A stretch of DNA of 64,000 nt from the NCBI GenBank assembly GCA_965240325.2, contig OZ251223.1:3162001-3226000 (forward strand), written 5' to 3'. Source of the DNA: Rebecca billardiae RCC1528. Lineage: Eukaryota > Protista > Haptophyta. The notes under the pieces were generated by a model. The model saw only the letters and a program-made list of their open reading frames with translations, was not told the DNA's origin and did no database searches. Shown in pieces: positions 37,280 through 60,523 of this stretch (position 1 is the stretch's first letter; every line of letters begins with the position of its first letter). Position numbers and translations under genes: made by a program.

Positions 37280-40200
37280 ATGCGAACGGCGCCGCCCCGC
37301 CCACCGCGCGGCGGCTTCGACGATGACGACGACGATGGTGACGACCGGCAAGAGGCCGCTTTCTCAGCAAACAATCGCCATGACGAAGACGAGTACGACG
37401 CCGCGCAGGACACGAAGCTCGCGCGCCAGACGGGCCGGCTCGGCATGGGGCACACCGGCATGTTCGCGTTCGCCGGCCTCTTCGCCGACGACACGTGGGG
37501 GCTGATGGGCGACTCAAGCGACGACGAGGAGCGTCGGCTCGACAACGATCTTCCCGTCTGGGGTGGCACGGCCGGCGCCACCGAGCGCGACGACGAGGCC
37601 GGCGCCGGCGCGCGCGCGTCCGACGGCGGCAGCGATGCCGGCGGCGAGGACGACGGTGCGGGCCGCGGCGGGGACAGCGAGGACGGGCTAGGGACGGGGC
37701 GTTCCTCGCGCTGGGCTGACGACGCGGAGCGCGAGGACGCGGCCGGCGAGCGCGGCTGGACGACCCTCGGCGAGCATCGCGGCGCGGCGCTCGGCTCGCC
37801 GAGGGGCGGCCGGCGCCGCGGCATCCTTGGCGGGCTCGGCGGGGAAGGCGTGGGCGGGGGCGCGGCGTGGTCGTGGGACTCGGCCGGGCTGACCGCAGAC
37901 TTCCGAGACGGGGCCGGCCTGCCGGACGGCCTGCAGCTCGCCGGCGCCGAGCCCGAGCTGGGCGAGGACGAGGACGGCACGCACAGCCTGCTGCTGCCCG
38001 CGGACGAGACGGTGTCGCTCACGATGTGCCTCGGGTACGAGCACGGCATCTCGCCGTGGACGCTGGAGGAGGACGGCAAGCTGCACGCGTACACGCTCGT
38101 GATCGCGCTGCGCCTCGACAACCTGCCGAGCACCTCGCTCCCGCTCTTCAACGGCGGGCCGGCCGCGCTCGCGAGCGGCGGCTCGAACAAGCCGGTCGAG
38201 TCGGTGCAGATCTTCAAGAACGGCGGCGTCGGCGCGCTCGGGCAGTGCGGCACGGCGGCGACGGCGCTCCGGCCGGGGCGCTTCACCTGGGTGGTGGTGA
38301 CGCGCAAGCCCGGCGAGCTCATCACCTACGTCAACGGCCAGCGCTGCGCCGAGGTCAAGCTCGAGTCGAAGGCGAAGGGCGACGGCAAGAAGGCGGAGCC
38401 GAACACGTCGTTTGCGATCGACCCGAAGCAGTGCGCGCTGCTGCCGTCGGCGGGCGGCGAGCTGTGCGAGCGCGAGGCGTGCGGCGTGGCGGTGAAGTAC
38501 GTCGCGCTGCGCACGCAGCACTGGAACGACGACAAGGTGCGCGAGGAGCTGCTCAAGGTGCGCAACACCGACGAGTTCGCCGAGGAGCGCGAGGAGTTCC
38601 GCGCCGCGCTCGCCGACCACCTCTCGCTCCAGCCGCTGTACGGCAAGCCGCCGCCCGTGTGGCTGCACCCGACGTTCTGCGCGGCGTTCGGCGACCACTG
38701 CATCGAGGGCACCGGCCTCGACGGCGCGGGCTCGGCGCACACCAGCCTCGAGTTCTTCGCGCTCGTGCTCAAGCGGATGCTCGCGAACCGCGCGCTCACC
38801 GCGCTGTTTGGCGCGTCGCTCTCGCACGCGGACTGGCAGACGTGCAACGCGCTGCTGCTCGCGCTGGACGACGCGAAGAAGCTGGCGCACCGCTTCGTGC
38901 AGTCGCTGTCGAACGGGCACGGCCGCATGTTCCTCTCGCAGCTCGTCACCTCCCTCAACAAGCTCAAGGTGGGCGAGGTGAAGATCGTGCCGTCCGCGCT
39001 GATGGGCGCGCCCATCTTGCTGCTCGTCGAGCGGCGCGAGCGCGCGCGCTGCACGGTCGTCGTGGTGTGCACCGCGCCCGAGCTGCTGGCGTACCACTCG
39101 GCCGACGCGACGGCGCTGCCGAAGCTCAAGTACCGCACGTGCCTCGTGCTCGACGACGTCGCCTGGGCCCGCGCCACCGACGAGGCGTTCTGGGGCCTCG
39201 TGTGGTACTGCGCGACAATCTCAAACGGCAAGGTGCGGCCCGAGCAGCTGCTGTACGAGGTGCTGCTCTCCTTCCTGGCGGGGCGGCCGCTGGACGACGC
39301 GCTGGGCGAGGAGGAGCGCGCGGGCGGCTCGGCCGCGGGCGCGGCGGGCGCGCCGTCCATGTCCGTGCAGAAGTCGAACACGGCGCACTACCGCACGATC
39401 TCGCACGCGGTGCGCCACCTGATGCGCGCGCGCGGCGTGCTGCCGCGCGCGCGCAAGCGGCTCATGCTGATGCTGCGCCTCGAGATGCTCTCGATGGCGT
39501 CGCACGACCTCGCGTTCGTGCGCACCGCCTCGCGCGCGGAGCGGCGCATCGTCGGCCTCGCCTGCCGCCAGGTCGCGCACCACACCTCCAAGCTCGCGCC
39601 CGACGGCGCGCGCGGCGCGGTCGACGCGCCGCTCAGCCTGCAGCAGATGGCCGAGATCAGCGGCCAGATCCGACGGATCGGCGAGCGGCTGGAGAGCGTG
39701 CCGAGCGGCGAGGGCGAGGCGCACGTCGCGCCGCCGCCGCTGATCCTGAACGAGTCGGAGCGCCACCTCGGCGCGCGCACCTGGACGCAGCTCGTCGGCG
39801 AGCGGCTGCTCGCCGGGAGCGTGCCCGCCGCGGTCGCGGCCGAGGCGGCGCGCGCGGGCGCGGACGCGGGCGCGGACGCGGACGCGCGCGCCGAGCTGCT
39901 CGGCCTCGAGCAGCGCACGGGGCTGCTCGAGGAGGACGCCGCCCCCGCGCTCGGCGCGCGGCGCGCGCGCGCCGAGCGCAGCGGCGGCGGCGGCGGCGGC
40001 GCGTCCGAGGAGGACCTGTACGCCTCGGGCGCGCCCTCGTCCGAGCTCGTGGGCGCGGAGGCCGCGCTCGGCGCCCAGCAGGTGGTCGCGCTCTACTTTG
40101 GCGCGAGCTGGTGCCCGCCGTGCCGCCGCGCGACGGCGATGCTGCAGAAGCTGTACGGCCGGCTGCGCGGCGCGGGCCACCGCTTCGAGGTCGTCCTCGT

Positions 40201-42842
40201 CTCGCTCGACTCGGAGGAGCGCGACTTCAAGGCGCACTTTGGGCCGATGCCGTGGCTGGCCGTCCCGTTCGAGGCGGCGCGCGTCAAGGCCGAGCTCGCC
40301 GAGACGTTCGGCGTGGACGGGCTGCCGTCGATCGTGCTGATCGACGGCGAGACGCACGCGACGATCTCGACGGACGGCGTGCGCGTGCTCACCAAGCACC
40401 CGATGCGCTTCCCCTGGACCTCGCGCCCGCCGCCGGCGACGCCGTCGCTGCACCCGCTCGCCGAGCGGCTGCTGCGCCGCTCGCCGGTCGACGCGGGCGC
40501 GCAGACGCTGCTGCCGATGTACGTGCCGATCGACATGCTGCAGCTGCCGACGCGGATCGGCTCGCTCGAGGACGCGGTCGCGGCGATGCGCCACTGCGAC
40601 CGGCTGTGCACCCTCGTCGCCGTGCAGGAGCACTGCGTCAAGAACACGCCGTACCTCGTGATCGCGCTGATCGCGCACACGTACACCGCGCTGCTGCCGA
40701 TGCCCGAGCCGCCCGGCAGCGCGGCGGCCGAGCGGTGCGTGTGGCACACGACGGGCGTGCGGTACGAGACGCAGCTGGACGTGCTGATCCTGCTGCAGCG
40801 CACGATCGAGCACTTCGCCGCCGCCGCCTTCTCCGTCGACCACACGCGGCCGATCGACGCGGTGCGGATGGTGGTGCCGCTCTGCATCGCCGCGGTCGCA
40901 GACGTGGTGCTGCGCAAGGCGGCGGTCGACATCGCCTCGCCCGTCTCGCTGCACCTCGCGGGCGGCGGCGTGGGCGGCGAGCTGGGGCACGCGGGCAAGG
41001 GGTACTGCTTCTCCTCCGGCGCGCTCGCGCGGCAGGCCGCGACCATCGTCGTCTTTTCACCCGAGCTCAACATTGCGCGCGCGCGCGCCCTCGACTACTT
41101 TGAGGCGTGCTGCGGCGCGTGCCACACCGTCTTCAACTGGGACCGCACCGACAAGCTCGAGCCCGCGGTCGAGCGGCTGGTGGCGGGGCTGTGCCGCAGG
41201 CTGGCGTTCCCGCTGGGCGAGAGCGTCACGCCGTCGTACATCGCCGACGTGCGCGGCCTCGTGCACAAGAACCACCCCGAGTTCATCGCGTTCCGAGACA
41301 TTGGCTTCTACCTCAAGCTCTTCCTCAACCCGCAGATGGACCGGTTCCCGTCGGGCGGCGCGCAGTGGACGCAGCGCGACGCCGAGCTGCAGTGGCAGTG
41401 GGACGCGGACTACAAGCGGTTCCGCGTGCAGGCGTTCGAGGGCACGCCGCTCTCGTGCCGCCCGCGCCTGCGCCGCGGCGAGATGCCGCCGTCGCACCGC
41501 TTCATGTCGCTGGCGGCCCCGTCCGAGTACGTGCGCCCCTACTTTGTGGAGAGCGAGGACGACGTGCTGCACATGTGGGACCTGCCCGACTTTGGCAGCC
41601 TCGACGTGGGCAACGCGAAGGCGCTGGGGCAGCACGACTCGGAGCTGCTGCTCTCCTTCCTCACCGCGCCGTACATGCGCGTGCCGCTCGTCCTCTCCTT
41701 CTTCTCGCAGAACGACCGCATCCACGCGCTGCAGTCGCGGCCGCTGCAGGCCGTACTCGACGGCTGCCTCTTCGAGCCCGCCAACCACCTGGCCGCCGCG
41801 CACGACGCGGCGGACATCGCCGACGTGCCGACCTCGGAGCCGCACCTGCTCGCCACGGCGCACGGGCTGCTGCTCAACGAGCTCGTCCACTCGCCCGCCG
41901 TCGTGCGCGAGGGCGCCCTGCGCCTCGCGCGCCAGGCGGTCGACCTGGACACTGGCCACGTCAAGTCGTCCACCTCGTCCATCATCCTGTACGTGCTGCG
42001 GCTGGGCGCGCGGCTCGACGGGTACCTCTCGCTGCTGTGCGAGCTCGGCGAGGGGACGCACGACTCGATCGCGCTGGAGCAGTGCCGCGGGCTGCGCGCC
42101 GCGCTGCCGCGCGCGCTCCCCGAGCTGCGCGCGTTCCGCGACGAGCTGCGCGCCGTGACGCTTGGCCCTCTGCACTCGATCGTGGCGGCGTGGTACTCCA
42201 AGCTGGTCGCCGAGTGCGAGGGGCGAGCGGACGACTCGGTGCTCGACGAGAACACCAAGCTGATGTGCGACCTGCAGGCGCACGTGCTGCTCGCGCACCG
42301 CTCCGTCGCCGCCACCGAGATGAGCGAGCCCATCGCGCACGCCTTTGTCACCGCCTTTGCCTTCCTCTCCACGCGGCACGAGTGGAACATGGACCTGTAC
42401 GGCACCCACTTTGCGGTGCCCGAGCACGAGCTGTTCGAGCTGCTGCAGCACGCGCGGCGCAAGCTGGTGACGTGGCTGCGGCAGCGCGCGAGCCAGGCGC
42501 AGCTCGACGCGATCATGGAGGCCGCCGTGCGCGTCGCCGCCACCACGGGCGCCGCGACCGTCGACGACGGCGCCTCCGCCGTCAACCGGTGGGCGTACGT
42601 GGCGGGCGCGCGCTCGCTCGGCCGCTTTGCGATGCACTCCGCGTACACGAGCGCGAGCGCGGGCGTGGGCGCGAGCGGCGGTGCGGGCGAGGACGCGGGC
42701 GGCGGCGCGGCCGAGGGCGCGCCCGCGGTGCGTGCCGGGCCGTTGCGCTTTGCGGACGCGCCAGAGCGCGCCGAGCGTGCGCCGGCGACCGACGGCGGCG
42801 CGGCCGCCGCTCCGGCGGCGGCGGCGGCCGGCGGCGGCGGCG

Positions 42843-42880
<38 letters not shown>

Positions 42881-45800
42881 ATCGCGACGGTGGGCGACGA
42901 CGACCTCGCGGTCGAGCTGGACGCGCAGGTGATGCAGCTCACGCTCAAGGCGTCGCACCCGCAGGCGCTGCCCAACGACGTGGCGAAGAACGCCGACATC
43001 CAGGCGATCTTTGGCAACGTGGCGATGCAGGCGTGCGTGCTCGCGCAGACGCAGCACTGCCGCGTGTACCGGCTGGTCGGCCGCTCGCACGACGTGGCGT
43101 GCTGGGCGGAGGACAAGAAGCTGCCCGAGACGGACATGTGGCGGCCGTACTACCCGAACGAGCTGTTCCCATCGGAGAAGGTGTGGCTCCCGGCGGTGCT
43201 CGAGCCGGTGCGCCGCGCGTACCTCACCTTCCCCAAGCCGCTCGAGCTGTTCCTGCCCGACGCGCCGCTGCCCGAGGACGCGACGGTCGCCTACCTGATC
43301 GGCAAGCAGCCGGGGCAGAGCGGCGTGTGGAAGGAGCTGTACGTGTACCGCTCGAGGCGGATGGTGCACGTGTACCGGATCGAGTCGCACGGCCGGCGGT
43401 ACTACCGCTCGCTCGAGTACTGCACGGACGCGCGCTTCTGCCTCGCCGCGCTGCAGCCCTCGACCGACCACCGCGTCTTCAAGTGGCCCGCGTGGGAGCG
43501 GCACGGCGGCGGCCACCCGTACGCGACCTCGCACGCCGAGGGGCGCTCGTGCGTCGTCACGCGCGAGTGGACGTGCGCGGACAACCTCTCGCTCGGCGTC
43601 GAGACGTTCATCCCGGCGCGGCTGCTGCGCGGCGTGCTGCCCGACGCGCTGCTCGCCTCGCACCGCTTCTGGCAGGACGAGGCCGACCTGCTGCGCGGCT
43701 ACCCCCTGGACGAGAACCGCTCGGACATGCTCACCGTCTCGCTCGCGCTCGGCGCACACGTCGTGCACGCGGGCGCGCGCGGCGCGACGCCGTCGGCGGC
43801 CGCGCCGCCCAAGGCGGCGGTGGACGCGGCGACCGACGCGTTCGCGCTCGCGCCGTGCGTCGCCACCGTCCGCCGCCGGCCCAAGCCCGCGCTCGTCGCG
43901 CGCCGCGACGCGATCGGCTCGATCGTCGCGCGGCTCGAGGCGTACGTGAGTCGGGAGCGGCTGCTCAAGGGGCCGTTCGAGTCCTCGTTCGACGTCGCGC
44001 GGCGCGCGGGCGAGCTGATGCGCCGCGCGCGCGGCTCGGCAAAGCTCGCCGCGCAGGCGATCGACGCGATCGACCCGGCGACGCTCGCCGGCCGGCGGCG
44101 CAAGCGCCACCGCTCGTGCGCCGTGCTGCTGCCGCTGCTCCTCGACCGCGCGTTCGACGCGCTCCAGCTGCTCTACGAGCTCGAGGCGGCGAGCGGCGTG
44201 CCGCTGCTCGACGCGGCAGAGGGCGGGCAGGAGGAGTGGGGGCACGCGCGGCGCGCGGCGGAGGCGCAGGCGGCCGCCGCCGCTGACGCCGCTGCCGCCG
44301 CCGCCGCGCCTGCCGGGGAGGCGCGGGCGGCCGGCGCCGCTGGCGACGCCATCGCCGCCGCCGCGCCCGCCGCTCCGCCCGCCGCCGCCGCCCCGCCGCC
44401 GCCCTCGCCCTCGCCGCCGGCGGACGGCGCGGCGCCGGCGCGCCCGGCGCCGAGCGGCGCCGGCGACGCGGCGCCCGCTGCCGATCGCGCGGCCGCGCCG
44501 GCGGCGGCGGAGGCCGGCGGCGCGCGCAGCAAGGCGTCCGGCGTGGCCGACTACGCGGACGCCGAGCTCATCCTGCTCGACCTGCTGCACGCGCCGCCCG
44601 CCTCCCACCTCGCCTCGCTCGCCACCGTGATGGCTCGGATCGAGCAGCTCGCGCACGTGCTCGCGTGGGCGCGCGCGCCCGAGTCGGACGACGACGCGGC
44701 CGCGGCCGCGGCGTGCGCGGCGGACGGCTCGTCGCTCGTGCTCGTGCAGTGCCCGCGGCTCAAGCTCTCGTTCGAGGCGCGGCGCGGGCCGGACGGGCAG
44801 GTGCGCCTCTTCTCCCTCGACCACGCCGACCTCTTCATCACGAACGGCGGGCGGTTTGCGTCGACGGTGTCGCTGCTCGAGGGCATCCCGCACTCGCTGC
44901 TGCTCGAGCACGCGTACAACGGCGAGCTGCAGGTGCTCGTGCCCGCGTACCTGCCCGTGCGCCCGTCGATCGACACGGCGCCCTTCTCGACCGAGCTCGT
45001 CCTCGACCGCGCGGACGGCTGGCTCAACGAGCTCGAGAACGCGTACTACATGTACCGCATCCACGTGTCGCTGTCCTTCTTGTCGAGCACGACGCTCGCG
45101 TCCGCGCTCTACCTGCTGCTGCTGCGCTACCTGCACCGCGACTACGGCGCGGTGGTGCAGCTCGTGGACACGGTGTCGTCGGACACGGCGCTCTCGCACG
45201 AGGAGAACATGCTGCTGCAGTTCCTGCACTCCAGCCGGCACGACATCGACCACCACCCCGACGCGCACGCGTGCAGGCTCAAGGTGTCGTTTGTGATGCT
45301 GGACGCGCCCGTGGTGCTGCCGTGGCAGCTCACGGCCGAGATGGCGCACTACGTGGCGAAGCTGTCGCAGGTGAGCGCCAACTGCCGGCTCTCGGCGGAG
45401 GAGGAGCTCGCGCTGCTCAACGGCTGCATCGTCGACGTCGCCGACCCGCGCTACCGCAAGTCCGGGCTGCAGATCCACCAGGTGCTGCTGTGCAAGAACA
45501 GGCGCGCGCAGCTGCGCGCGCACGCGGCGGGCGCGCGCAGCTGCGCGGTCGAGACGCCCGTGCGCCGCGTGGGCAGCCGGTGGATCACGCAGTGGGACTC
45601 GACGCTGCAGACGTACGACCGCGCCGCGCTGCACAAGTTCCTCGGCGAGCTGCAGATGAAGTTCGTGCACACGCGCATGCTCGCGCTCGACGGCGTGGTC
45701 GGGCTCGTGCAGTCGCTCAACGCGCCCAAGAGCGCCACGCCGCCCACGATCGCGGGCGGCGGCTTCCTCACGCTCTACTGCCTGCTGCAGGGCTCGACCG

Positions 45801-46216
45801 AGGTGAAGATCGTCTCGCAGAACTCGGGCATCTCGCTCGCGACGATGCTGCTCCCCCTGTACGCCGACGCGGCCGAGCGCTCCCTGCTGCACTCGATCCT
45901 GCTCACGCTCGCGCGCAAGCCTCTGCTCGGGCCGTTCCTGCCCGAGTTTGTTGACACGCGCAAGCACAACCGGCGCGAGGTGTTCGTCGGGATCGCGCCG
46001 GGGGACGACGCGGGCGAGGCGCCGCTCGGCGTGCTCGTGCGCGGCGTGCTGCACGAGCTGCTCGCGCTCAGCGCGCCGCCCTCCGACGGCGTGCGCCAGG
46101 CGGTGCAGCGCAAGATGCTGCAGCGGCGCGTGGACGCGCTCACCAAGGAGCGCATGTTTGGGCTCGGCGGCGGCGGCTGGGGCGGCTGGGGCGGCGGCTG
46201 GGGCGGCGGGCTGTGG

Positions 46217-46247
<31 letters not shown>

Positions 46248-49200: not shown

Positions 49201-52200
49201 GCTGCTGCGCAAGCAGCCGCTCACGATCCACTGGTTCCTCGAGCAGATGATCTTCCCCGCGTTCATGCAGCACCAGGTGACCAAGCTCTCCGCGTCGGGG
49301 CAGGAGGTGGGCGGGGAGATGCTCTTCTCGACGAGGCTTGGCTTCTCGGGCACGCCCTCGGACCTGCTGCCGCGCGCGCTCGGCCGGTGCGGGTACGAGA
49401 AGGGCTCGGACGGCAAGATGCTCTCGGTGCTCACCGACGCGGAGGTGGTCTCCTGGACCGTGATGGAGCACGGCTGGACCGTCGAGACGCTGCTCACGAC
49501 CGTCGCCACCCTCGAGCCGCGCGTGCACGCGCTCATCGACACGGGCGCGCTCATCACCGGCCTCAACAACCTGCAGGTCGCGCAGTTCCTGCTGCGCGTG
49601 CCCGCGTTCGCCGCGTGGTGCGAGGGCGTGGTCTTCCTCGACGAGGCCGACCAGAAGATGATCTACGTCCGCTCCACGCGCCGCGTGCTCAAGCTCTCGC
49701 AGTCGGGCATCTCGCCGCACGCGCGCTTCACCTTCTTTGACCAGGTGCACACGACGGGCATGGACATCGCGCAGCACTCGGACGCGCGCGCCGTGCTCAC
49801 GCTGGGCAAGGACATGAACTTCCGCGACTACGCGCAGGGCGCGTTCCGCATGCGCGGGATCGGCGCGGGGCAGAAGATCTCGCTGCTCCTCATCCCGGAG
49901 GTGCAGGGCCTCATGTGCAGGCAGCTCGCCAAGGCGGGGTACGCGCGGCGCGCGCTCGCGCTCGCGCACGCCGACGAGCCGACGGCCGTCATCGCCGCCG
50001 CCGCCGCCGACGCCGACGCCGACGCCTCGGCGCCGCTGGTGCTGCAGCTGGAGGACGTGGCCGCGTGGCTGGTGATCAACTCGATGAAGGCGGAGACGAC
50101 GCAGTACGACCAGCTCTGCTCGCAGAACCTCGCCAACGTCTGGCGGCTGAGCGCGTTCAGCGAGCTGATGCGCGGGTACACGCACTTCAAGGTGCGGCCC
50201 GAGGACGCGCACCAGTTCGTGCTCGACTCGCTGGGCCACGCGTTCCTCTCGGCGAAGCTGGGCACGACGGGGCGCGGCGCGATCGAGGGGAAGGCGGTCG
50301 CGCTCTTCTTCGGCGCGGTCGGCGACGACTCGGACGCGGGCGACCTCGAGATCGACGCGGACCTGGTGAACGCGGTGCGCACGGCGCACGGCCAGTTTGG
50401 GCAGAGCTTCGAGGTGGTGTACGTCTCCTCCTCCGCCTCGCTCGAGTGGTTCAACGACGCGTTCGGCGAGATGCCGTGGCTCGCCGTGCCGTTCACGCAC
50501 TCCGCGCGGCGCAAGCTGCTGCGCGAGACCTTCGGCGTGGGCGAGCGCGCGCAGGTCGTGCTCATCGACAGCGACGGGCACACGATCACGCGCGAGGGCG
50601 CGCGCCTCTTCCAGCTCGCGGCCGCGTGGGAGGCGGCGGAGAAGGCGCACGCGGACAAGCTCAAGGGGATGGAGTACGAGTCGGAGGCGAAGGGGAAGGA
50701 GGCGGCGCTGCTCGCGAAGGAGGAGGCGCGCATCGAGCCACTCCGCGCCGCGCACAAGCGCGCCCTCCGCTGGCTAAGCGCGCTCGGCCCAGACGAGCTG
50801 GGCGAGGTGCGCGCGTTTGCGAGTGCGCCTGAGGTGCCCGAGGCCGTGCAGGCGACGCTCGACGAGGCGACGGCGGCGCACGGCCGCGCGATCGAGGGCG
50901 TGCGCGCGCTGACGCAGTCGCAGGTGGAGCAGCTCGCCGCGCCGCCCACCGCCAGCGGCCCGCTGCTCAGCCTCGCCGCCGTGCTCTGCAGCTTCTTCGG
51001 CGTGCGCCCCGACTGGACGTCCTTCCGCGCCAAGCTGGCGGTGTTCCCCGGGCTGGTCAGTCGCGTGGCCAAGTTCGAGCCGAGCCTCGTGCAGGGCGCG
51101 GCGAGCCGCGCGCTGCAGCGGTACGTGGGCGGCGTGAGCGAGGCTGACGCGCCCGCGCTGGGCATGGCGGGCGGCGTCGCCGCGCTCGCGCTGCACCGCT
51201 GGGTGCTCGCGCTCGGCGCGCTGCTCGAGGCGAGCGACGAGGCGCGGCGCGCGACCGAGGTGTCAGGCGCGAGCGCGCTCATGCGCGGCGCGTGCGCGTG
51301 CGCGTGCGACCTGCTCGGCCTCGAGGACGTGCACGACCTGCCCGGCCTGCTCGCCGTCGCGATGGCGGCGGGCGGCCCGCTGCCCGCCGCGGCGCTCACC
51401 GCCGCGCACGCCGCGGACGCGCCGCTCGCGCCCGGCCCGGCGGCCGGGCTCGTCGCGGGCGCGGACGCGGGCGCGTGCGCGGACGAGGAGGAGGAGGAGG
51501 AGGGAGGCGACGCCGCGTCGATCGAGGCGGCGCAGTCGCGGCTGATGCGGATGCGCCAGTTCGCCGCGATGCTGGACAAGGACATCAAGACGGCCAAGCT
51601 CGCGGGCGCGCCGCTCCTCGAGCGCGCCGCGACGCAGGCCGGCCGGCTGAGCAACAAGGCGGCCGCGTTCGAGCGACTGCTCAAGGAGCCGGCTGCGCTC
51701 GAGTCGGACGAGGCGACGCGCGACGCGCTGCTCTTCACGTGCAAGGTGCTCGAGCCGGAGCCGCCGCGGGAGAAGGGGGAGAAGAAGGGCGCGCCGGCCG
51801 AGCCGCTGCTCGTGCAGGCGAAGCGGCTCCTCGGCTGGGCCGCGGGCGCGCCGGGCCTCTCGTACGCCGCCTTCTCCGCGTTCTGCGGCCGTCTGCGCGA
51901 GGTGCCCAACGAGATCGAGAACGGCCGGCTGCGCGTCGAGGAGTGGTCGCGCCTCGCCGCGCTCGCCTCGCGGCTCAAGATGGGGATGAAGGACAAGCAC
52001 GAGTACGACGGGAAGGCGGCGCACCCGTGCGTGCTCGAGCTCGCCAACTGGGTGACCGCGATCGGCGAGTACCTCGAGTCTTACTCCGAGCTGATGCGCA
52101 AGCAGAAGCAGCTCGAGGCGGTGCGCGCCGAGGCGGCCGCTGCGCAGCGCGAGCTCGACGAGAACCTGCAGAGCGCCATCGCCGCCGAGTCGTCGGCGCT

Positions 52201-55200
52201 GCCCGCCGACATCGACCCGCTCACGCTGCGCGCGGTGCGCAAGCGCGTGCGCCGCGCGGGCTTCAACGCGCCCACCGCCGCCGCCATCGCCGCGCTGCAG
52301 CACGCCGCCAACCGCGAGGACGACGCGGTGGCGCTGCTCGAGCAGGTGCCGACCGCGCGGCACGCGCTGCGCGCGCTCACGCAGCCCGAGCTGCTCGCGT
52401 GCGTCTCGCCCGGCGCGGTGTCGGCGAAGCAGCTGCGCAAGGTGGGCCGCGCGCTGCGCGAGGCCGAGCTGCGCGCGCACTCCGACGCGGTCGGCGAGCA
52501 CCTCGCCGCCGTGCAGGCGCAGGCCGACGCGTGGGCCGAGGCGCGCAAGAAGGCGGCCGCGCGCCGCAGGCGGCACGCGGCCGCGGCCGCGCGCGCGCGC
52601 GCCGCCGCCGCGCCAGCCGCGGACGGCGGCGCGGACGGCGGCGCGGACGGCGGCGCGGACGGCGGCGCGGACGGCGGCGCGGACGGCGGTGCGGACGGCG
52701 GCGCGGACGGCGGCGCGGACGGCGGCGCGGACGGCGGCGCGCCCGCGGCCGCCTCTGCCGTGGCGGCGGCCGCAGCCACCAAGCTGCGCGCGGCCGCCAA
52801 GCGGCGCAAGGCCGTGGCGCCCAAGCGCGCGCGCGCCCGCCGCGCGTACTGCGCGCAGCGTGCCGAGTGCGAAGGCAGCGGCAGCTCGGCCATCGCGGAC
52901 GAGGAGAGCGACGAGGACTTCTCGCCCTCCGAGTCGGAGGAGGACGGGCTTGAGCGCGAGGAGGAGTGGACGGAGGACGAGGTGGAAAGCGACAGCGACG
53001 AGGAGGACGAGGAGGAGGAGGAGGAGGACGACGACGACGACGACGAGGACGAGGACGAGCAGACGGCGGAGGAGGCGGGCTCGGAGGCGGCGAGCGCGCG
53101 CGGCAGCGCGCCCGCGGCCGCAGATGCAGAGGGCGGCGCGCCCGCCGCCGCGGACGGCGAGGCGGACGTGCCGGACGACGCGTCGGACGCGACGTACGTC
53201 GGCGCGGACGACACGCTCGTCGAGGTCGACGGCATCCGGCTCACGCGCGCCGAGCAGGCGCTGCTGTGCTGGGTGGTCGCCACCGCCTCGCTCGCGACCG
53301 CGCTGCAGGCGTCCGAGCCTCAGCGGCACAAGGTGTCCGCGCTCGAGAAGCGGATGGCGGCGCGCACGCGCGAGCTCGACCGCGCGCTCGCGCACAAGCA
53401 GAGCCGGCTGCGCGCCAAGGCGGAGCTCCTAGGCGTCCGCCCCTTCCCCCGCTGGGCTGACTTCCCCTGGGTGTGCCACAAGGCGCACTCGGCGGTCGAG
53501 GACGAGCTGAGACTGGCGATCGGGCTGCGCGACCTGCGCCGCCTGGACGAGCTCGTGCCGGGCGCGGAGGCGAAGGGGCTGCTCAAGGGGACGAGCGCGG
53601 TGCTGTTCGAGGCGCAGGAGCTGCGCGCGCTGCTGCGCGCCGAGGGCGCGGCGATGCGGCGCACCACCGAGCCCTCCCTGCACGAGCTCGACTGCGCGGA
53701 GGGCGGAGCCCCCTTCGGCGGCGACGCGGGCGCGCGCGCGGTGCGGGCGTCGAGCGCGCCCGCGCCCGCCGCGCGCCAGCCGACCTCGGAGCGCAGCGCG
53801 CAGCTCAACCGCGCGCTGGACGTGTTCCTCGAGCCCGTGCAGACCGAGGTGCTCGACGGCGTGCCCCGGCCGCGCCGCTTCGTCGACGTCCTCTCCGAGC
53901 GCGCGGACGAGTTCCTCGACTTTGTGCGCACGGCCGAGGAGATGGGCGTGGTGGCGGCCATCCTGCAGAGCGTCGCCGCCTCGGAGGGCGTGGGCGACAT
54001 CGAGACGGAGCAGTGCCGCGAGCAGGAGGCGGAGAAGGAGAAGGACCAGGAGCAGGAGCAGGAGATCGAGATGGAGCGGTACGCCGACCTCGCCTACCAG
54101 CGCGACGGCGAGGAGGTGCGCCGCTGGCCGCTCGCCGCGCTGGGCGACGAGGGCGCGCTGCTGGGCGCGGGCACGGTCTACCCGGCGTCCGGGCTGCGGC
54201 TCTACTCGCGCTCGCCGCTGCCCTTCCCGCCCGCGCTGCACGTCTCGCGCAACTACTTCGACCTGCACTGGGTGGGCGAGCGCCGGCTCAAGAACGTCAT
54301 CTGCGCGCTCGACTGGGCGCCCTCGGTGGCCGCGCTCGCGCCCGCGCCGCCGCGCCGCGCCGAGCTCTCGGCCGCGCAGCGCGACCGGCTGCGCAAGGCG
54401 GTGCGGCTGCTCGACGTGGACGACGCGGGGCACTTCGCGCCGGACAAGCTGGTCGAGGCGCTGCGCTCGGCCGAGGACATCTCGCTCACCGAGCCCGAGC
54501 TGCACGAGCTGCTCGCGCACGCGCACGCCTCTGCGCCCGCGGCGGACGGCGGCGCCGACGGCGGCGCCGACGGCGGCCGCGCGGCCGCGCCCGTGCACGC
54601 GCGGCCGCTCACGTTTGAGCAGCTGATGGGCGTGCTCACGTCGGGCGTGTACAGGCGCGAGCAGCTGGGCCGGCGGCGCGTGGTCGTGTCGCTCGCCGAG
54701 GCCGAGACGCTGCGCTGCGTGCTGCACCTGCGCCACGCCAGCGGCGCGCCGCTCGTGCCGGGCGCGGACGTCGGTCTCGCGATCCGGTGCGTGAGTGCGA
54801 ACGACGCGCTGCTCGACAGCTCGGCGGCGTGGACGCCGCCGCTGGAGTACGAGGGCGCGGCGATGCACAACTGCTGCCGCTTCATCGACTGCGCGATGCA
54901 CTTCACCCCCGCCGAGCTCAACGTGCTCCTCCGCTCGATCCCCGCCGAGCCCGCCCGGCGGCGCATCTGGTTCTCGCAGACGCTCGCGTGCCGCCGCCGG
55001 CTGTCCAAGCGTTGGGAGCAGACGCCGCTCGCCAAGCTCTTCACGCTCGAGGACGAGTGGGCGATGCTCAAGCAGCGCGCGCAGGCGGTGCGCGTGCGCG
55101 CGGCGATCCGCGCGCGCGGTCTCCTGCTGCACGACGCCTTCACCAAGTTCGACGCCGACCAGAACGGCCTCCTCTCGCTGGGCGAGGTGTACGGCGCGCT

Positions 55201-58200
55201 CGAGTGGCTCCGGCTGCCCGAGCTCACGGCCGCTGACATCCTCTTCTTTGTGCGCTCCATCTCCAAGGAGGCGCACGTCACGTACGCCGAGTTCATCGAG
55301 GCGCTGTGCTCGCCCGAGGAGGCCGAGGCGATCCACCTCGGCGTCGGCGCGGGCGGCGACGCCGAGCGCGCGCCCGCCGCCGCCGCCGCGGTGGCGGCGG
55401 GCGCGCACGGCGGCGCGCCCGGCGGCGCGCCCGGCGGCGCGAGCGGCGCGGCGCGGCAGCGCTCCGAGGTGGTGCCGCGCGACGAGGCGGCGCTGCACGA
55501 CCTGCTGCACGAGACGCTCTCGTCCGAGCGGCGCGCGGAGGAGGCGCTCGAGCAGGCAGAGGCGCGGCTCGTGCAGCACGCCGCGAGCGCGCTCGAGGCG
55601 CAGTTCGTCGAGTCGGACTTCTCGTGGATGCGGCAGACGCGCCGCTCGAGCGCGCTCAACCCGCGCACGACGCGCACCTCGAGCTTCTACGACCTCTCGC
55701 GCGGCGTGGTGGGCTCGCAGGAGGGGAAGCCGCTGTGGATGGACGGGCGGGGGAAGTGGCTCTTCGTGCGGCACGGCGGGCTGCGCTGCCTCAAGGGCTG
55801 GCCCTCCACCTTCCTCGTCCTCCGCGTCCCCTTCCGCAAGAACGGCGGCGGCGTGCACCTCAACCAGTTCTCCGTCTCGCTCACGCTCAAGCTGGTGGAC
55901 GACGGGCCGCGCAACCTGCTCTCGACCGCGGGGTGGGACCAGTGGAGCACGGCGAAGGAGCACGACGAGGAGGCGCAGGTGCGCCGCGTCGAGACCGGCC
56001 ACGTCGGCTCGCTCGACGCGTACGGCGACGCCGACGCGCCCACGCTCGAGCCGGGCGAGTGGGTGACCGTCACAATCACCGTCGACACGGTCGTGGGCGC
56101 GCTCCGCACGTACATCAACGGCGAGCCCGCCGCGTCGCTCAACTCGGCCAAGGTGGGGAAGGACTCGCAGTTCGCGCTGAAGGGGCGGCTCGCGCTCTTC
56201 TTCTCCAAGCACAAGCCGTCCGACGACGACGACGACATGGACATGGCGTACTACGTGCGCGCCGCCGCGATCCACAACCGCGTGCTGAGCGCTGACGGCA
56301 TCCGCAAGGAGGCGGAGGTGCACCGCAAGATGCTCATCGAGGACGCGATCGGCGCGGCGCCGCGGCACTTTGGGCTGGCGCTGGAGGAGGCGCACGCGGA
56401 GGCGCCGTTCACGCACCTCGACGAGCTGCGCGCCAAGCTCAACGAGATGCGCGCCGCCGCCGACCGCGCGGCCAACGAGCTCTGGTCCGCGCTCGCGTGC
56501 AGAGACGAGCGCGCGGCCGCGGACGTGCTCGACGGCGCGTCCGCGCACCACCTGGCGCACCTGCTGCACTGGCGGCGGCGCGGCGTGCCGCCGGTCGCGG
56601 ACGAGCAGACCGCGCCGCTGGGCGAGACGCTGCTGCACCAGGCCGCATTCGCCGGCTCGATCCCGACCATCGAGGCGCTGCTCACCGAGGAGGCGTCGGA
56701 GGAGGCGCAGCGCGAGAGGGCGGGGCGGCCGCTCTCGCCCGTGCTCGAGCACGCGCACGCGCACGGCCAGCCGCACGGCCAGCCGCATGGGCAGCAGCAC
56801 GGCGGCGCGGCGGAGCCCGGCGCGGCGGAGCCCGGCGCGGCTGCGGCTGGCGCAGCGGCCGCAGCGCAGCCGGCGGCCGGTGCGGGCGGCGGCGGCGCCG
56901 CCGCCGCCTCGCCGCCTGTGCGCGTGCGCGTGCGGCTCGCCGAGCTCGCGCCCGACGTGGAGACGGCCGACCTCGTCGCGCTGCTCGAGCGGCACGGGGC
57001 GCGCGTGCTGGCCGGCAGCGCGGCCGTGGACACGGACGCTGCGACGCTCGAGTGCGCGGGCACCGGCGTGGCCGAGGTGGAGATGGCGCACCTGCCGGCG
57101 GCGCGCGCGCTGCTCGCGGTACGCGCGCCGCGCCCCGATCCGCGCGCGCCCACGCCACGCGCGCACGTGGCCTCACCGCCGCGCGCGCACGTCTGCACCG
57201 GCTGCGCTCGACCGCGGCGCCGCGCGCGTGCGCGCAGGCACTCAACGGCGCGACGCTGTGCGGCGCGGCGCTGCGCGCGACCGCGGAGCCCGAGCTGCCG
57301 CCAGACGCAGTGGAGGTGCCGCCCACGGCGCCCGCGAGCCCCAGGCATCGCGCGCGGGCGCACAGCCAGCCCAGGTCGCCCGCCGCGCGCGTCGCCTCGC
57401 AAGACGAGGGTGGCTGGGCGGCGGACGCGCGCCCGCGCACGCTCCCTCTGAACAGGCGCGGCCGACGCACCAAGTGCACGCCGCTGCACGCGGCCGCGGC
57501 CGCGGGCCACGCGGACGTGATTCGCATACTCCTGGATGCGGGTGTGCGCACGCGCCGGCGGCCGCGCGCGCCCGGCGCGGCCGTGCGCGAGAGGGGGGGA
57601 TGGGCTGGTCGCGGCGTCGCCTGCGCGGCCGACTGCATGCCACGGACTCACGGCTGCTGGGCGCCGCGCACGCGCTGCGCTGCCTGGTCCGCCGCGCGCA
57701 GGCGCTGCGGTCGAGCCGCTGTCCGCGGCCGGCCGCACGCCGCTGTACATGGCATGCAGCCGCGGCTGGGGCGACGCCGCGCTCGTGCTCGTCTCTGCAG
57801 GTGCGCCGCCGCCTCCGCCTGCCTGCCTGCCGCCGCGCGCGCCCGACCCCGCATCCGCGACTCTGCCGCCGTGGCCCGCGCCGCCAGCCCTGGGGCATGC
57901 TCCCGGGCAGGCTCTGCCGACGCTCACGCGACCCGCGCGCCCGTGCCCGCGCGCTGGCTCGGCCGCAGGCGCGGATCCGTACACCTCGTCGGCGGGCGAG
58001 GCGCCGCTCTCCCTGCTGCGCAAGTGGGGCGGCACCGAGGCGTCGACCGAGGTGTGCCGCAAGCTCGCCGCCGCGTGGGAGGAGGTGAGCGGCAAGGGCG
58101 CCGCCGAGGCCGCGGCGGTGCGCGCGGGCGTGGACGGCCAGAGCTCACGGGCAGACGACAGCGATAGCAGCAGCGACGACGAGGCAGCCCAGCGCGCGTC

Positions 58201-58369
58201 GGCGGCGGATGCACCGGCCAAGGAAGCCGAGGACACGGAGGACGACGACGACCTCAGCGACCTCTATGGCTCCGAGGACGACGAGTTTGGAGAGCGCGGC
58301 GATGCGGACGAGGAGGACTCGGACTTCTGGGACGAGGACGCGTCCTCGTACGACGAGGAGGAGTACTGA
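37280..58369 (+). CDS. Giant (about 6880 aa) DUF3638/DUF3645 SF2-like P-loop ATPase with LamG-like, thioredoxin, dynein-stalk-like, EF-hand, RRM and ankyrin domains; 4 exons
   Basis: Exons 37280-57118, 57238-57541, 57702-57800, 57969-58369 (GT-AG introns; 20643 nt, in frame). Motifs: MGGGKTT (47732), DEVD (48137), AIPFVGKDVP..SEFAHPD (about 48830), GFSGT (49340), DQVHTTGMDI (49739), QGAFRMR (49835), WCPPC (40109), DADQNGLLSLGE (55151), TPLHAAA/TPLYMAC ankyrins. Strong GC3 bias throughout. Confidence 0.9.
52619..52738 (+). repeat. Coding 12-bp minisatellite x10 (ADGG repeats)
   Basis: GCGGACGGCGGC x10 with one synonymous variant, inside the giant ORF. Confidence 0.95.
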
Positions 58370-58795: not shown

Positions 58796-59311
58796 TCACG
58801 AGTCAGAACGCATCAGGCTGTTTATCTGTGTCAGAAGTAGGTCTGGTGATGATAACACGGCGCGCATTCGACGAGGACGACGGCTCGGCACTGGGCTGCG
58901 AGCGGGCGTCGTGCGTGAGCTGCATGGCGCATCAGCCTCGTCACCTGAAGATCCAAGAGCATTGGAGTCCTCGCTGGTGGCATCACTCGAATCATCGGCG
59001 TCGCGCGAGGTATCGTCGCGGTCTGAGCTGACGCTGCTAGCGCCTGAAGCTTCTGCGCTTTGGCCCCAGGGCAACGAGCTTGCACTCGAGGCGTCGCCAA
59101 CGAGAAGCACGGCGGAAAGGGTGGCAGCCCGAAGGAGAGCACGGCGATCGATCAAATGTTCTGGTCCGACGCCAAACGGGGAGCCCGCTTGGGGCAAAGG
59201 GGCCTCGAGATGTCGCGCCCCCCAGCTAGCGCGCAGCGACTGATGGCGCAGGCCTGCCCCACCAAGCAGGGGCCAATGTGCCCCCGCCGGGACGGCCGGC
59301 GGCGGCGCCAT
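58796..59311 (-). CDS. Possible small acidic protein with twin-arginine-like signal
   Basis: 171-aa frame from ATG 59311: DRRALLRAATLSAVLLVGDASSA followed by a D/S/E-rich tail. Overlaps one candidate AKR start, so weak. Confidence 0.25.
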   Translation of the reverse strand: MAPPPAVPAGAHWPLLGGAGLRHQSLRASWGARHLEAPLPQAGSPFGVGPEHLIDRRALLRAATLSAVLLVGDASSASSLPWGQSAEASGASSVSSDRDDTSRDADDSSDATSEDSNALGSSGDEADAPCSSRTTPARSPVPSRRPRRMRAVLSSPDLLLTQINSLMRSDS

Positions 59312-60523
59312 GCTGATTTCCCTGAATTGATGCGGCTCGCGCCCAGCGACAAGCCGACAGCCCTCACAGCCGCCGGCCGACACGCCACATCCGCCGTCGA
59401 ACGCAGGCGCCCTCACGCGACGATGCTGTGTCCTCAGGTGCCGCGGATGCCGATGGTCGGCCTGGGGGTCTGGAAGGCGCCGGCTGAGGTGACTGCGCAG
59501 GTCGTCTACGACGCCGTCAAGATTGGGTACCGCCACCTCGACTGCGCGTGCGATTATGGCAACGAGAAGGCTGTCGGCCAGGCGCTCAAGCGAGTCTTTG
59601 ACGAGGGGATCTGCTCGCGCGAGGACATGTGGATCACGTCCAAGCTGTGGAACACCTACCACAAGCGCGAGCACGTGCTGCCCGCGTGCCAGCGCACGCT
59701 CGACGACCTCGGCCTCGAGTACGTCGACCTGTACCTGATCCACTTCCCGATCAGCCTCGAGTTTGTGCCATTCGAGCAGCGCTACCCGCCCGAATGGTAC
59801 GCACGCCGCCGCTCTGCCGCTCTGCAGCAGCCTCGGTGGTGCGCGTGCGCGCCCGTCGTCACCGCCATTCCGCTCCCCCCCCCCCCTCCCGCGCACCGCG
59901 CGCCCGGCAGGACGGACGAGCCAAACAATGCGGGCGTGATGCAGCTCGCCAACGTGCCCTACCGCGAGACTTGGGAGGCGATGGAGGCGCTCAAGGAGGC
60001 GGGCAAGGCGAAGGCGATCGGCGTGAGCAACCTGAACGTGCAGTCCCTGATCGACCTGCTCCGCTACTGCAAGGTGCGCCCCGCGTGCAACCAGATCGAG
60101 AACCACGTGTACCTGACGCAGCCCAAGCTGGTCGACTTCTGCCACGATCAGGACATCGGCGTCGTCGCCTTCTCGCCGCTGGGCGCGGTGTCGTACATCG
60201 GCATGGGGATGGCCGAGGCGTCGGAGAACGCGCTCAACGACCCCGTCGTCGTCAAGATCGCGCAGGCGAAGAAGCGCACCCCGGCGCAGGTGCTGCTGCG
60301 CTTCCAGATCGAGCGCGGCGTCGCTGTGATCCCAAAGTCGGAGAAGGTGGAGCGGCTCAAGGAGAACTTGGCGCTCTTCGACTTCTCGCTCACGCCGGAG
60401 GAGGTGAAGGAGCTGCTGGCGCTCGATCGCCGCCGCAGGTTCAACGACCCGGCGGTGTACGCGAAGGGCTGGGGCCCGTCAGGCTCCTGGCTCGCCAAGC
60501 ACGGCTACCCCATCTACGAGTGA
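59243..60523 (+). CDS. Aldo-keto reductase (xylose reductase / sugar-phosphate reductase-like); start uncertain (59243, 59330 or 59423)
   Basis: MPMVGLGVWK, GYRHLDCACDYGNE, ITSKLWN, YVDLYLIHFP, AIGVSN, NQIENHVYL, AFSPLG, VIPKS, LKENL; catalytic D/Y/K/H present. In-frame intron 59797-59910 gives YPPEW-TDEP. Confidence 0.92.
   Translation: MAQACPTKQGPMCPRRDGRRRRHADFPELMRLAPSDKPTALTAAGRHATSAVERRRPHATMLCPQVPRMPMVGLGVWKAPAEVTAQVVYDAVKIGYRHLDCACDYGNEKAVGQALKRVFDEGICSREDMWITSKLWNTYHKREHVLPACQRTLDDLGLEYVDLYLIHFPISLEFVPFEQRYPPEWYARRRSAALQQPRWCACAPVVTAIPLPPPPPAHRAPGRTDEPNNAGVMQLANVPYRETWEAMEALKEAGKAKAIGVSNLNVQSLIDLLRYCKVRPACNQIENHVYLTQPKLVDFCHDQDIGVVAFSPLGAVSYIGMGMAEASENALNDPVVVKIAQAKKRTPAQVLLRFQIERGVAVIPKSEKVERLKENLALFDFSLTPEEVKELLALDRRRRFNDPAVYAKGWGPSGSWLAKHGYPIYE

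What the first reader, a model, noticed from the sequence alone, without database searches (positions are those of the whole stretch)
37280..58369. About 6900-aa multi-sensor DUF3638/DUF3645 ATPase: candidate undescribed redox/Ca2+/microtubule-coupled machine
Seen: one gene with a 19.8-kb first exon. Domain order by motif: acidic N-terminus, LamG-like (37900-38540), helical core, WCPPC thioredoxin (40070-40417), long core, helicase-type motifs I, II, III, V and VI (47732-49855), second thioredoxin fold, dynein-stalk-like repeats, acidic tract, EQEQE motif, two EF-hand regions, second LamG-like (55680-56300), ankyrin, RRM, two ankyrins. Established: DUF3638 and DUF3645 co-occur in very large, functionally uncharacterised eukaryotic proteins. 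Inference: so many input modules (thiol redox, Ca2+, microtubule, RNA, glycan or protein binding) on one intact ATPase suggest a giant signal-integrating remodeller, conceptually like sacsin or RNF213. I know of no described protein with this architecture but could not search.
Basis: partly seen in the sequence, partly recalled or inferred. Interest (0 to 1): 0.9.

Follow-up and report, generated by a model that had tools for sequence, protein, structure and literature searches.

The report
Giant SecA-like ATPase with dynein microtubule-binding module
This is one real gene for a protein of about 6,850 residues from a widespread but unstudied protist family. A SecA-like ATP motor is joined to thioredoxin, calcium-binding and true dynein-type microtubule-binding modules, a combination found in no paper searched here.

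Summary
A single 19.8-kb exon (37280-57118) has third-codon-position GC of 95-100% in one frame. It is colinear with single giant proteins and transcripts from other protists. Four short 3' introns are predicted; no RNA runs were listed to test them.

HMM support exists for:
- DUF3638 and DUF3645
- an active WCPPC thioredoxin and a cysteine-less second one
- an EF-hand pair
- one ankyrin repeat

The "dynein-stalk-like" claim is confirmed. A profile of unit 1 matches dynein microtubule-binding domains in the PDB at E 2.6e-19. The LamG-like domains stay below threshold and the RRM has no support.

New here:
- The ATPase folds closest to SecA, by a small margin over nucleic-acid SF2 motors.
- About 2,000 residues of conserved N-terminal core have no known fold relative.
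- The database name "ubiquitinyl hydrolase 1" has no domain support.

The architecture is not unique. At least 67 related clusters exist, including kinetoplastids, piroplasms, a chromerid, haptophytes and pelagophytes. The microtubule-binding subfamily includes a Chrysochromulina-type protein. Unchecked scan notes report paralogues elsewhere in this genome.

Function is inferred, not shown: a microtubule-docked, calcium- and redox-responsive ATP-driven remodeller.

The parts
37280..58369 (+). Whole gene, first ATG to stop; predicted protein about 6,814-6,853 aa
37280..57118 (+). Exon 1: 19,839 nt, 6,613 codons, no intron
   Evidence: GC3 is 0.95-1.00 in one frame throughout. Colinear BLAST blocks to single proteins of other taxa.
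37280..38086 (+). Acidic, Gly-rich low-complexity N-terminus; start codon uncertain (ATGs at 37280, 37445, 37460, 37505)
   Evidence: No homologue coverage over aa 1-200.
38087..39679 (+). Conserved block A (aa 270-800). It begins with a ConA/LamG-like beta-sandwich (core 38201-38371), followed by a family-specific region.
   Evidence: Laminin_G_3 E 0.005, below cutoff; 5 of 19 relatives hit it. Profile versus PDB gives a sialidase lectin domain at E 0.015.
40079..40348 (+). Thioredoxin domain 1, tryparedoxin/nucleoredoxin type, WCPPC active site at 40109
   Evidence: PF13905 E 2.2e-20, 73 bits; motif position
40457..43729 (+). Conserved blocks B and C (aa 1060-2150): helical scaffold plus beta-rich domain, family-specific
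   Evidence: AF2 model pLDDT 84.7, pTM 0.83. No PDB relative. Shared with fungal DUF6606 / 'ubiquitinyl hydrolase 1' entries in AFDB.
44537..46159 (+). Conserved block D (aa 2420-2960), family-specific, not folded here
47177..50269 (+). SF2 ATPase module (aa 3300-4330). DUF3638 lies at 47609-48262 and DUF3645 at 48812-48910. Motifs: I at 47732, II at 48131, III at 49343, V at 49748, VI at 49835. An insert of about 370 aa sits between motifs II and III.
50288..50581 (+). Thioredoxin domain 2; the CxxC position is occupied by non-cysteine residues, so it is predicted redox-inactive
   Evidence: PF13905 E 2e-7; tryparedoxin PDB E 2e-8, with the alignment showing the loss
50696..51367 (+). Dynein-type microtubule-binding unit 1: CC1-like helix plus globular MTBD helices H1-H6
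   Evidence: Profile A5 versus PDB: all 60 listed hits are dynein stalk/MTBD regions (a few with generic or odd depositor names), best E 2.6e-19, including isolated MTBD structures 2rr7, 3j1t, 6rzb and 3err. Atlas features also point to PF12777.
51464..52273 (+). Divergent unit 2. Only the H6-plus-CC2 part is recognisably dynein-like.
   Evidence: Profile A6 versus PDB: DNAH1 stalk 8i3j at E 3.6e-5. hhalign to unit 1 is not significant.
52618..53075 (+). In-frame simple repeats: a 12-nt unit x10.3 (DGGA, 98% identical) and the acidic D/E tract
53777..55339 (+). Conserved block F (aa 5500-6020): acidic EQEQE motif, family-specific region and an EF-hand pair at 55127-55306. The canonical loop DADQNGLLSLGE is at 55151.
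   Evidence: EF-hand found in 27 of 29 relatives at this position.
56003..56686 (+). Second ConA/LamG-like region (core 56033-56155) followed by a weak ankyrin repeat
   Evidence: Laminin_G_3 E 9.5e-5, 23 bits, below cutoff; Ank E 0.12-0.18. tblastn to relatives P0002, P0005 and P0006.
56918..57374 (+). RRM-like beta-alpha-beta-beta-alpha-beta pattern seen by eye, split by predicted intron 57119-57237. It lacks aromatic RNP1/RNP2 residues.
   Evidence: No Pfam hit at E<=10 on either piece. Spliced reading.
57456..58369 (+). Three short 3' exons (57456-57541, 57702-57800, 57969-58369) encoding about 2.5 ankyrin repeats and an acidic tail
   Evidence: PF00023 25.8 bits. Splice phases and GC3 pattern.

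Best explanation
The locus is one gene for a soluble giant protein of about 6,850 aa. It has no hydrophobic stretch of transmembrane type. It belongs to the DUF3638/DUF3645 family.

Shown:
- The catalytic core is an SF2 two-RecA ATPase. Every family-invariant NTPase motif is intact.
- Its closest solved fold is the SecA DEAD motor. An insert of about 370 aa lies between motifs II and III, which is where SecA (from my own knowledge of SecA) carries its preprotein cross-linking domain. A long scaffold-like helix follows RecA2.
- About 2,000 residues of conserved, family-specific scaffold (blocks A to D) precede the motor.
- A conserved C-terminal block with an EF-hand pair follows it.
- This subfamily adds a redox-competent WCPPC thioredoxin, a cysteine-less thioredoxin, a module homologous to the dynein microtubule-binding domain, ConA/LamG-like sandwiches and ankyrin repeats.

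Inferred:
- ATP hydrolysis drives mechanical remodelling or threading of a protein substrate rather than nucleic acid.
- The dynein-type module docks the machine on microtubules.
- Ca2+ (through the EF-hand) and thiol redox state (through the thioredoxin) modulate it or take part in substrate handling.

The anatomy is near certain. The mechanism is a hypothesis.
For: Single gene:
- GC3 is 0.95-1.00 in one frame over 19.8 kb.
- Blocks A to F match single proteins colinearly. These include assembled transcripts of 5,000-6,800 aa marked complete.

Family:
- PF12340 scores 114 bits and PF12359 scores 51 bits.
- 67 relatives at E down to 0.

Intact motor:
- G187, G189, K190, D321, E322, D324, S724, G725, T726, H858, G861, D863, Q887, R891 and R893 are invariant in 35 sequences and present in the window.

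SecA-like fold:
- All 30 best Swiss-Prot AlphaFold models are SecA (E 4e-7).

Microtubule-binding homology:
- (E 2.6e-19, dynein only).
- Sub-threshold PF12777 hits in two relatives.

Other modules:
- Thioredoxins.
- The EF-hand is conserved in 27 of 29 relatives, with a canonical loop in the window.
- No transmembrane-like segment.
Against: - No experiment and no transcript data; no sequencing run was listed.
- SecA leads nucleic-acid SF2 motors (FANCM, INO80, RIG-I) by only 1-2 Z units.
- No SecA Pfam model hits the protein.
- The insert is all-helical in the model, which by my recollection is unlike the SecA domain at that position.
- Homology to the dynein module does not prove microtubule binding. 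Tubulin-contact residues were not mapped.
- Pfam's own dynein stalk model does not hit the window sequence.
- Blocks A, D and F were not folded, so a catalytic domain could hide there.
- Relatives often carry ubiquitin-related modules (UBA, NZF, WWE, ubiquitin, Mib-Herc2). These point to a ubiquitin-linked role that this model does not explain.
Confidence: 0.5

Rival explanations
1. The motor is a nucleic-acid helicase or translocase, or an RNA/DNA sensor of the RIG-I, FANCM or Snf2 kind. The accessory modules would then localise or regulate a nucleic-acid transaction.
For: - A profile search touches the PriA motif I region, though at E about 1.
Against: - No nucleic-acid-binding domain is recognised by Pfam anywhere in the protein.
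- The RRM-like stretch lacks the aromatic RNP residues.
- SecA aligns over more residues and across the flanking helices.
- The insert lies between motifs II and III, as in SecA and, from my own knowledge, unlike RIG-I or Snf2.
Confidence: 0.2
2. The protein is a ubiquitin-system enzyme. It could be a deubiquitinase, as UniRef's automatic name 'ubiquitinyl hydrolase 1' says, or an unconventional ligase, with a catalytic centre hidden in the orphan blocks.
For: - UniRef names many relatives 'ubiquitinyl hydrolase 1'.
- Relatives carry UBA, zf-RanBP/NZF, WWE, ubiquitin and Mib-Herc2 domains.
- Blocks B and C share a fold with fungal entries that carry the same name.
Against: - No OTU, USP, UCH, Josephin, MINDY or other peptidase family hits the window protein, or the aligned blocks A to D and F of 19-35 relatives each.
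- The confident model of blocks B and C has no protease-like or E2/E3-like match in the PDB.
- No invariant cysteine occurs in blocks A, B, C or D.
- This protein itself carries none of the ubiquitin-binding modules.
- The name appears to be an automatic annotation.
Confidence: 0.12
3. The giant ORF is an artefact: either a chance open frame in GC-rich DNA or several adjacent genes read as one.
For: In this DNA (about 74% GC) long ORFs arise by chance. The antisense strand carries a 3,232-aa ORF. No transcript data could be obtained.
Against: - The GC3 signal of 0.95-1.00 is confined to one frame over the whole exon.
- Six colinear conserved blocks match single proteins and single assembled transcripts of distant taxa.
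- Pfam domains all lie in the same frame.
Confidence: 0.03

Closest known systems
DUF3638/DUF3645 giant proteins (Pfam PF12340 + PF12359). Examples: Leishmania infantum XP_001467416.1, Babesia bovis BBOV_IV000220, Aureococcus KAK7249807.1, Prymnesium KAL1524752.1, and a 6,981-aa protein whose cluster includes Chrysochromulina tobinii KOO52982.1.
   Same: Same two Pfam domains. Colinear conserved blocks A to F. 34-54% identity in the ATPase. The EF-hand pair sits at the same place in 27 of 29 relatives. Thioredoxin, LamG and ankyrin accessories recur.
   Different: The dynein-type module is confined to a subfamily: the window, P0002, P0005, P0006, P0007 and fragments. This protein lacks the UBA, NZF, WWE and ubiquitin modules that many relatives have. 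No member has a described function.
SecA, the bacterial preprotein translocase ATPase (for example PDB 3jv2, 2fsf, 5eul)
   Different: No sequence-level membership; no SecA Pfam or NCBIfam hit. The insert is about 370 aa and all-helical. The protein is a eukaryotic cytosolic giant with no link to a SecY channel. The margin over other SF2 motors is small.
Dynein heavy chain stalk and microtubule-binding domain (PF12777; PDB 2rr7, 3err, 3j1t, 6rzb)
   Same: A profile of unit 1 matches the globular MTBD and adjoining coiled coil of axonemal and cytoplasmic dyneins at E 2.6e-19 to 1e-7. Unit 2 matches H6 plus CC2.
   Different: There is no AAA+ ring; the motor is SF2. The sequence after H6 of unit 1 diverges into a Cys-rich family motif instead of CC2. 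Pfam's model does not reach the window sequence itself. Microtubule binding is untested.
Tryparedoxin / nucleoredoxin (Thioredoxin_8)
   Same: Domain 1 has the WCPPC motif and scores 73 bits. Domain 2 aligns to tryparedoxin structures at E 2e-8.
   Different: Here the domains are embedded in a giant ATPase. The second copy has lost both cysteines.
RNF213 and sacsin
   Same: They are also very large, multi-domain, ATPase-containing cytosolic proteins.
   Different: From my own knowledge: RNF213 has a dynein-like AAA+ core and E3 modules, and sacsin has Hsp90-like, DnaJ and HEPN domains. Neither appeared in any sequence or fold search here.

Membership tests
DUF3638/DUF3645 giant ATPase family | PF12340 (DUF3638) above the gathering score | tested here: met
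   114.1 bits against a cutoff of 31, E 8e-33
DUF3638/DUF3645 giant ATPase family | PF12359 (DUF3645) above the gathering score, downstream of DUF3638 | tested here: met
   51.2 bits against a cutoff of 25
DUF3638/DUF3645 giant ATPase family | Colinear conserved flanking blocks shared with other members | tested here: met
   Blocks A to F are colinear with P0006, P0007, P0017, P0020, P0043, P0048 and P0063
SF2 ATPase/helicase superfamily | Two RecA lobes with motifs I, II, III, V and VI | tested here: met
SecA | Sequence membership (SecA_DEAD and other SecA models) | tested here: not met
   No SecA family in Pfam at E<=0.01 or in NCBIfam at E<=1. No SecA among PDB sequence or profile hits.
SecA | DEAD-motor fold with a domain inserted between motifs II and III and a helical scaffold after lobe 2 | tested here: inconclusive
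   SecA is the top fold match and the insert position agrees. The insert is helical and much larger, and the margin over other SF2 motors is 1-2 Z.
SecA | Works with a SecY-type channel to move polypeptides | not testable with these tools
   No membrane segment in the protein. Needs biochemistry.
Dynein heavy chain | Stalk microtubule-binding domain | tested here: met
   Profile A5 versus PDB E 2.6e-19, including isolated MTBD structures. Pfam PF12777 itself does not hit the window at E<=1.
Dynein heavy chain | Ring of six AAA+ modules | tested here: not met
   No AAA or dynein motor Pfam family anywhere in the protein. The only ATPase is SF2.
Thioredoxin_8 (tryparedoxin/nucleoredoxin type) | Domain model above cutoff and a CxxC active site | tested here: met
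   Domain 1: 73.2 bits, WCPPC. Domain 2: 32 bits but no CxxC, so it has the fold without the redox site.
EF-hand | EF-hand pair model above cutoff with a canonical 12-residue loop | tested here: met
   PF13499 scores 32.3 bits against 30. Loop DADQNGLLSLGE. The partner loop is degenerate by eye.
Deubiquitinase ('ubiquitinyl hydrolase 1', the UniRef automatic name) | A recognisable cysteine- or metallo-peptidase catalytic domain | tested here: not met
   No peptidase family in Pfam for the window or for 19-35 relatives per block. No protease-like fold match for blocks B and C. Blocks A, D and F were not folded.
RRM | RRM model hit; aromatic RNP1/RNP2 residues | tested here: not met
   No hit at E<=10 on the exon pieces. 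The spliced reading lacks the aromatic residues. The spliced sequence could not be submitted to a tool.
LamG / ConA-like lectin | Laminin_G_3 above the gathering score | tested here: inconclusive
   17.4 and 23.0 bits against a cutoff of 27.6. Relatives hit the same model at the same places. PDB lectin domain at E 0.015.
Ankyrin repeat | Ank model above cutoff | tested here: met
   One repeat at 25.8 bits against 21.1, in exon 57456-57541. The neighbouring repeats are weak but fit the consensus after splicing.

The most novel reading that the evidence does not exclude
This haptophyte-type subfamily may be a new class of cytoskeletal mechanoenzyme. In this reading, a SecA-type polypeptide-threading motor is docked on microtubules through a borrowed dynein microtubule-binding domain. 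It is gated by Ca2+ through its conserved EF-hand and carries its own disulfide reductase. It would therefore unfold or extract disulfide-containing or tubulin-associated proteins at microtubule arrays such as the flagellar or haptonemal apparatus.
Probability: 0.15. Interest if true: 0.85.

Novelty: new variant of a known kind. Interest (0 to 1): 0.62.

Why it matters
DUF3638/DUF3645 giants occur across eukaryotic supergroups, including Leishmania, Trypanosoma, Babesia and Theileria. Every named relative retrieved here is annotated as hypothetical or carries an unsupported automatic name. No paper in the searched library assigns the family a function.

This work gives the family three concrete, testable handles:
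- The motor is SecA-like, which suggests a protein substrate rather than a nucleic-acid one.
- One subfamily carries a true homologue of the dynein microtubule-binding domain, which predicts where the protein sits in the cell.
- An EF-hand pair is a conserved part of the family's C-terminal block, which predicts Ca2+ control.

A dynein microtubule-binding domain outside dynein would also interest people who study motor evolution and domain shuffling.

Tried and rejected
- I recalled that the family might carry a viral-tegument-like deubiquitinase domain. The paper (PMC9741609) mentions no ATPase, P-loop or DUF, so I dropped this.
- Single-sequence phmmer of both microtubule-binding units against the PDB found no dynein. 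Only the family profile did.
- hhalign of units 2 and 3 against the unit 1 profile was not significant.
- A third repeat near 53261 is therefore not supported.
- Atlas feature search of block D gave only low-recognition Mediator hits, which I treated as noise.
- Atlas shape search of blocks B and C gave TM below 0.3.
- Profiles of blocks A, B+C and D against the PDB gave nothing, or only the lectin-like N-terminus.
- For block F only the 60 best of 643 matches were shown, all EF-hand. Weaker non-EF matches could not be seen.
- NCBIfam and PADLOC found nothing.
- A UBA-like stretch seen by eye near 52337-52504 has no Pfam hit at E<=10.
- Both searches for sequencing runs listed none. Read laying was therefore not used, and the splice model rests on sequence alone.
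- Literature searches by Pfam and InterPro accession, DUF6606 and 'MTBD-like' returned nothing relevant.
- The 2024 survey of huge proteins does not mention the family.

Full report
**Observation**

The window has about 74% GC across this locus. An ORF runs from 37184 to 57451, with the first ATG at 37280. Long ORFs are cheap in such DNA; the antisense strand has one of 3,232 aa. I therefore tested coding by codon-position composition. GC3 is 0.95-1.00 in every 600-nt window from 37880 to 57080, in this frame only, and the signal collapses after 57118.

At the 3' end, four GT..AG introns with matching phases join the main exon to short exons. The introns are 57119-57237; 57375 or 57258 to 57455; 57542-57701; and 57801-57968. 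These short exons again show high GC3, while the introns are flat. The spliced model has no internal stop, ends at 58369, and gives 6,853 or 6,814 aa. No public sequencing run was listed for the locus. Read laying was therefore not used, and the splice model is sequence-based only.

**Single gene by homology**

A search with the ATPase region found 67 giant proteins of 3,700-8,000 aa. They come from pelagophytes, haptophytes, a chromerid, kinetoplastids, piroplasms, a euglenid and many transcriptome or metagenome sources, at up to 54% identity.

BLAST of the whole exon 1 product against them shows six colinear conserved blocks:
- A: aa 270-800
- B: aa 1060-1790
- C: aa 1875-2150
- D: aa 2420-2960
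- ATPase: aa 3100-4300
- F: aa 5500-6020

These blocks lie within single proteins, including assembled transcripts marked complete. Several genes read as one is therefore very unlikely.

**Domain calls**

| Feature | Position | Evidence |
|---|---|---|
| Thioredoxin_8 no. 1, WCPPC | aa 934-1023 | E 2e-20 |
| DUF3638 | aa 3444-3661 | E 8e-33 |
| DUF3645 | aa 3845-3877 | E 8e-14 |
| Thioredoxin_8 no. 2 | aa 4337-4434 | E 2e-7 |
| EF-hand pair | aa 5950-6009 | 32.3 bits, cutoff 30 |
| Ankyrin repeat | exon 57456-57541 | 25.8 bits, cutoff 21.1 |

- Thioredoxin domain 2 aligns to tryparedoxin structures (E 2e-8), but non-cysteine residues stand where WCPPC should be.
- The EF-hand pair has one canonical loop, DADQNGLLSLGE. 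EF-hands occupy the same position in 27 of 29 relatives, so Ca2+ binding looks like a family feature rather than an add-on.
- After splicing, the C-terminus reads as about 2.5 ankyrin repeats.
- The two LamG-like regions remain below Pfam's cutoff, although relatives hit the same model at the same places.
- No RRM is detected, and the candidate lacks the aromatic RNP residues.
- No transmembrane-like segment exists.

**The ATPase**

All NTPase motif residues are invariant across 35 family members and are present in the window: Walker A GxGK, DExD, SGT, HxxGxD and QxxxRxR. An AlphaFold2 model of aa 3300-4330 was confident (pLDDT 82, pTM 0.77).

Its matches were as follows:
- Foldseek found SF2 motors only.
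- The 30 best Swiss-Prot AlphaFold models are all SecA.

Motif II (DEVD) and motif III (SGT) are separated by a helical insert of about 370 aa that contains DUF3645. From my own knowledge of SecA, this is where it carries its preprotein cross-linking domain. A 53-residue helix follows lobe 2. I therefore call the motor SecA-like. The margin over nucleic-acid SF2 motors is small, and no SecA sequence model hits it.

**The orphan core**

In AlphaFold DB it matches family fragments, apparently dinoflagellate by their accession series. It also matches fungal entries named 'DUF6606 domain-containing', 'P-loop NTPase' or 'ubiquitinyl hydrolase 1'. The scaffold is therefore shared with the fungal branch. 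No Pfam family covers blocks A to D in the window or in 19-35 relatives per block. No peptidase domain is found, and no cysteine is invariant. The UniRef name 'ubiquitinyl hydrolase 1' has no support here.

**The dynein-type module**

- Pfam's dynein stalk model did not hit the window.
- Single-sequence PDB searches found nothing.
- The Atlas feature search pointed to PF12777 clusters.
- An exhaustive phmmer search of 1.84 billion representatives returned 24 relatives. Those scanned look like fragments of the same family, several with a thioredoxin upstream and EF-hand, LamG or ankyrin downstream. Two gave sub-threshold PF12777 hits.
- A profile of unit 1 with 16 of these relatives then matched the stalk or microtubule-binding region of axonemal and cytoplasmic dynein heavy chains. 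The best E was 2.6e-19. The hits include isolated MTBD structures 2rr7, 3j1t, 6rzb, 3err and 6kjn, and no non-dynein protein appears among the 60 listed.
- Unit 2 keeps only the H6-CC2 part (E 3.6e-5).
- A third repeat is not supported.

That subfamily includes the 6,981-aa protein whose 90% cluster contains a Chrysochromulina tobinii fragment. This also suggests, as an inference, that the window comes from a haptophyte-type alga.

**What is known**

Full-text searches for the Pfam names and accessions, DUF6606 and MTBD-like terms found no functional study. A 2025 paper states that the mechanism of DUF3638 is undefined (PMC12615304). All named relatives are 'hypothetical' or 'conserved hypothetical'. 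Unchecked notes from this scan report at least three other DUF3638 giants in the same genome, one with the same domain order. They also report dynein-type stalk modules in other non-dynein proteins of this genome. I did not test these notes.

**Verdict**

The RNA and glycan inputs are unsupported, and the architecture is not unique. Its closest relatives share the domain order, and unchecked scan notes report paralogues in the same genome.

The best-supported working model is a cytosolic, SecA-like, ATP-driven remodeller. It would be docked on microtubules by a borrowed dynein module, with conserved Ca2+ sensing and a built-in thiol reductase. Only the parts list is shown; the mechanism is inference. 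The gene is a new architectural variant of a catalogued but uncharacterised family.

Noticed in passing
window 41057-50755, minus strand: A 3,232-aa antisense ORF, plus several others of 500-1,200 aa, overlaps the gene. With sense-strand GC3 near 1.0, the opposite strand rarely forms stop codons. These look like by-products of codon bias, not genes.
   Followed up: partly
window 52618-52741: A 12-nt unit is repeated 10.3 times at 98% identity, in frame, encoding (DGGA)n. A shorter copy of the same peptide repeat lies at 54545-54577. This looks like recent microsatellite-type expansion inside the coding region.
   Followed up: no
window 51290-51367 and relatives in alignment A5: Directly after helix H6 of microtubule-binding unit 1, the relatives share a Cys-rich motif (consensus CTxAMxAACECVCDLxGL). 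The window keeps it as ACACACDLLGL. It replaces dynein's CC2 and has no known counterpart.
   Followed up: no
window 48812-48910 (DUF3645): The 33-aa DUF3645 lies inside the helical insert between ATPase motifs II and III. It is one of the most conserved stretches of the family (consensus AIPFVGKDVPSxxSEFAHPDV). Its role is unknown. It is a candidate substrate or partner contact.
   Followed up: partly
window 52337-52504: A UBA-like pattern by eye (GF...AAIAALQHAANREDDAVALLE). Pfam finds nothing at E<=10.
   Followed up: yes
window 59060-60523, plus strand: The next ORF downstream reads like an aldo-keto reductase by eye, apparently with an intron read through. It was not tested.
   Followed up: no
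window 46165-46283: A Gly/Trp-rich low-complexity linker (GGGWGGWGGGWGGG...) between block D and the ATPase is encoded by a (CGG)n-like array. Relatives do not cover it.
   Followed up: no
relatives P0017, P0052, P0004 and P0001: Family members in other algae carry unexpected extra Pfam domains: MBOAT, ADP-ribosyltransferase (PF01129), DnaJ and PDZ. The scaffold seems to be a frequent acceptor of shuffled modules.
   Followed up: no
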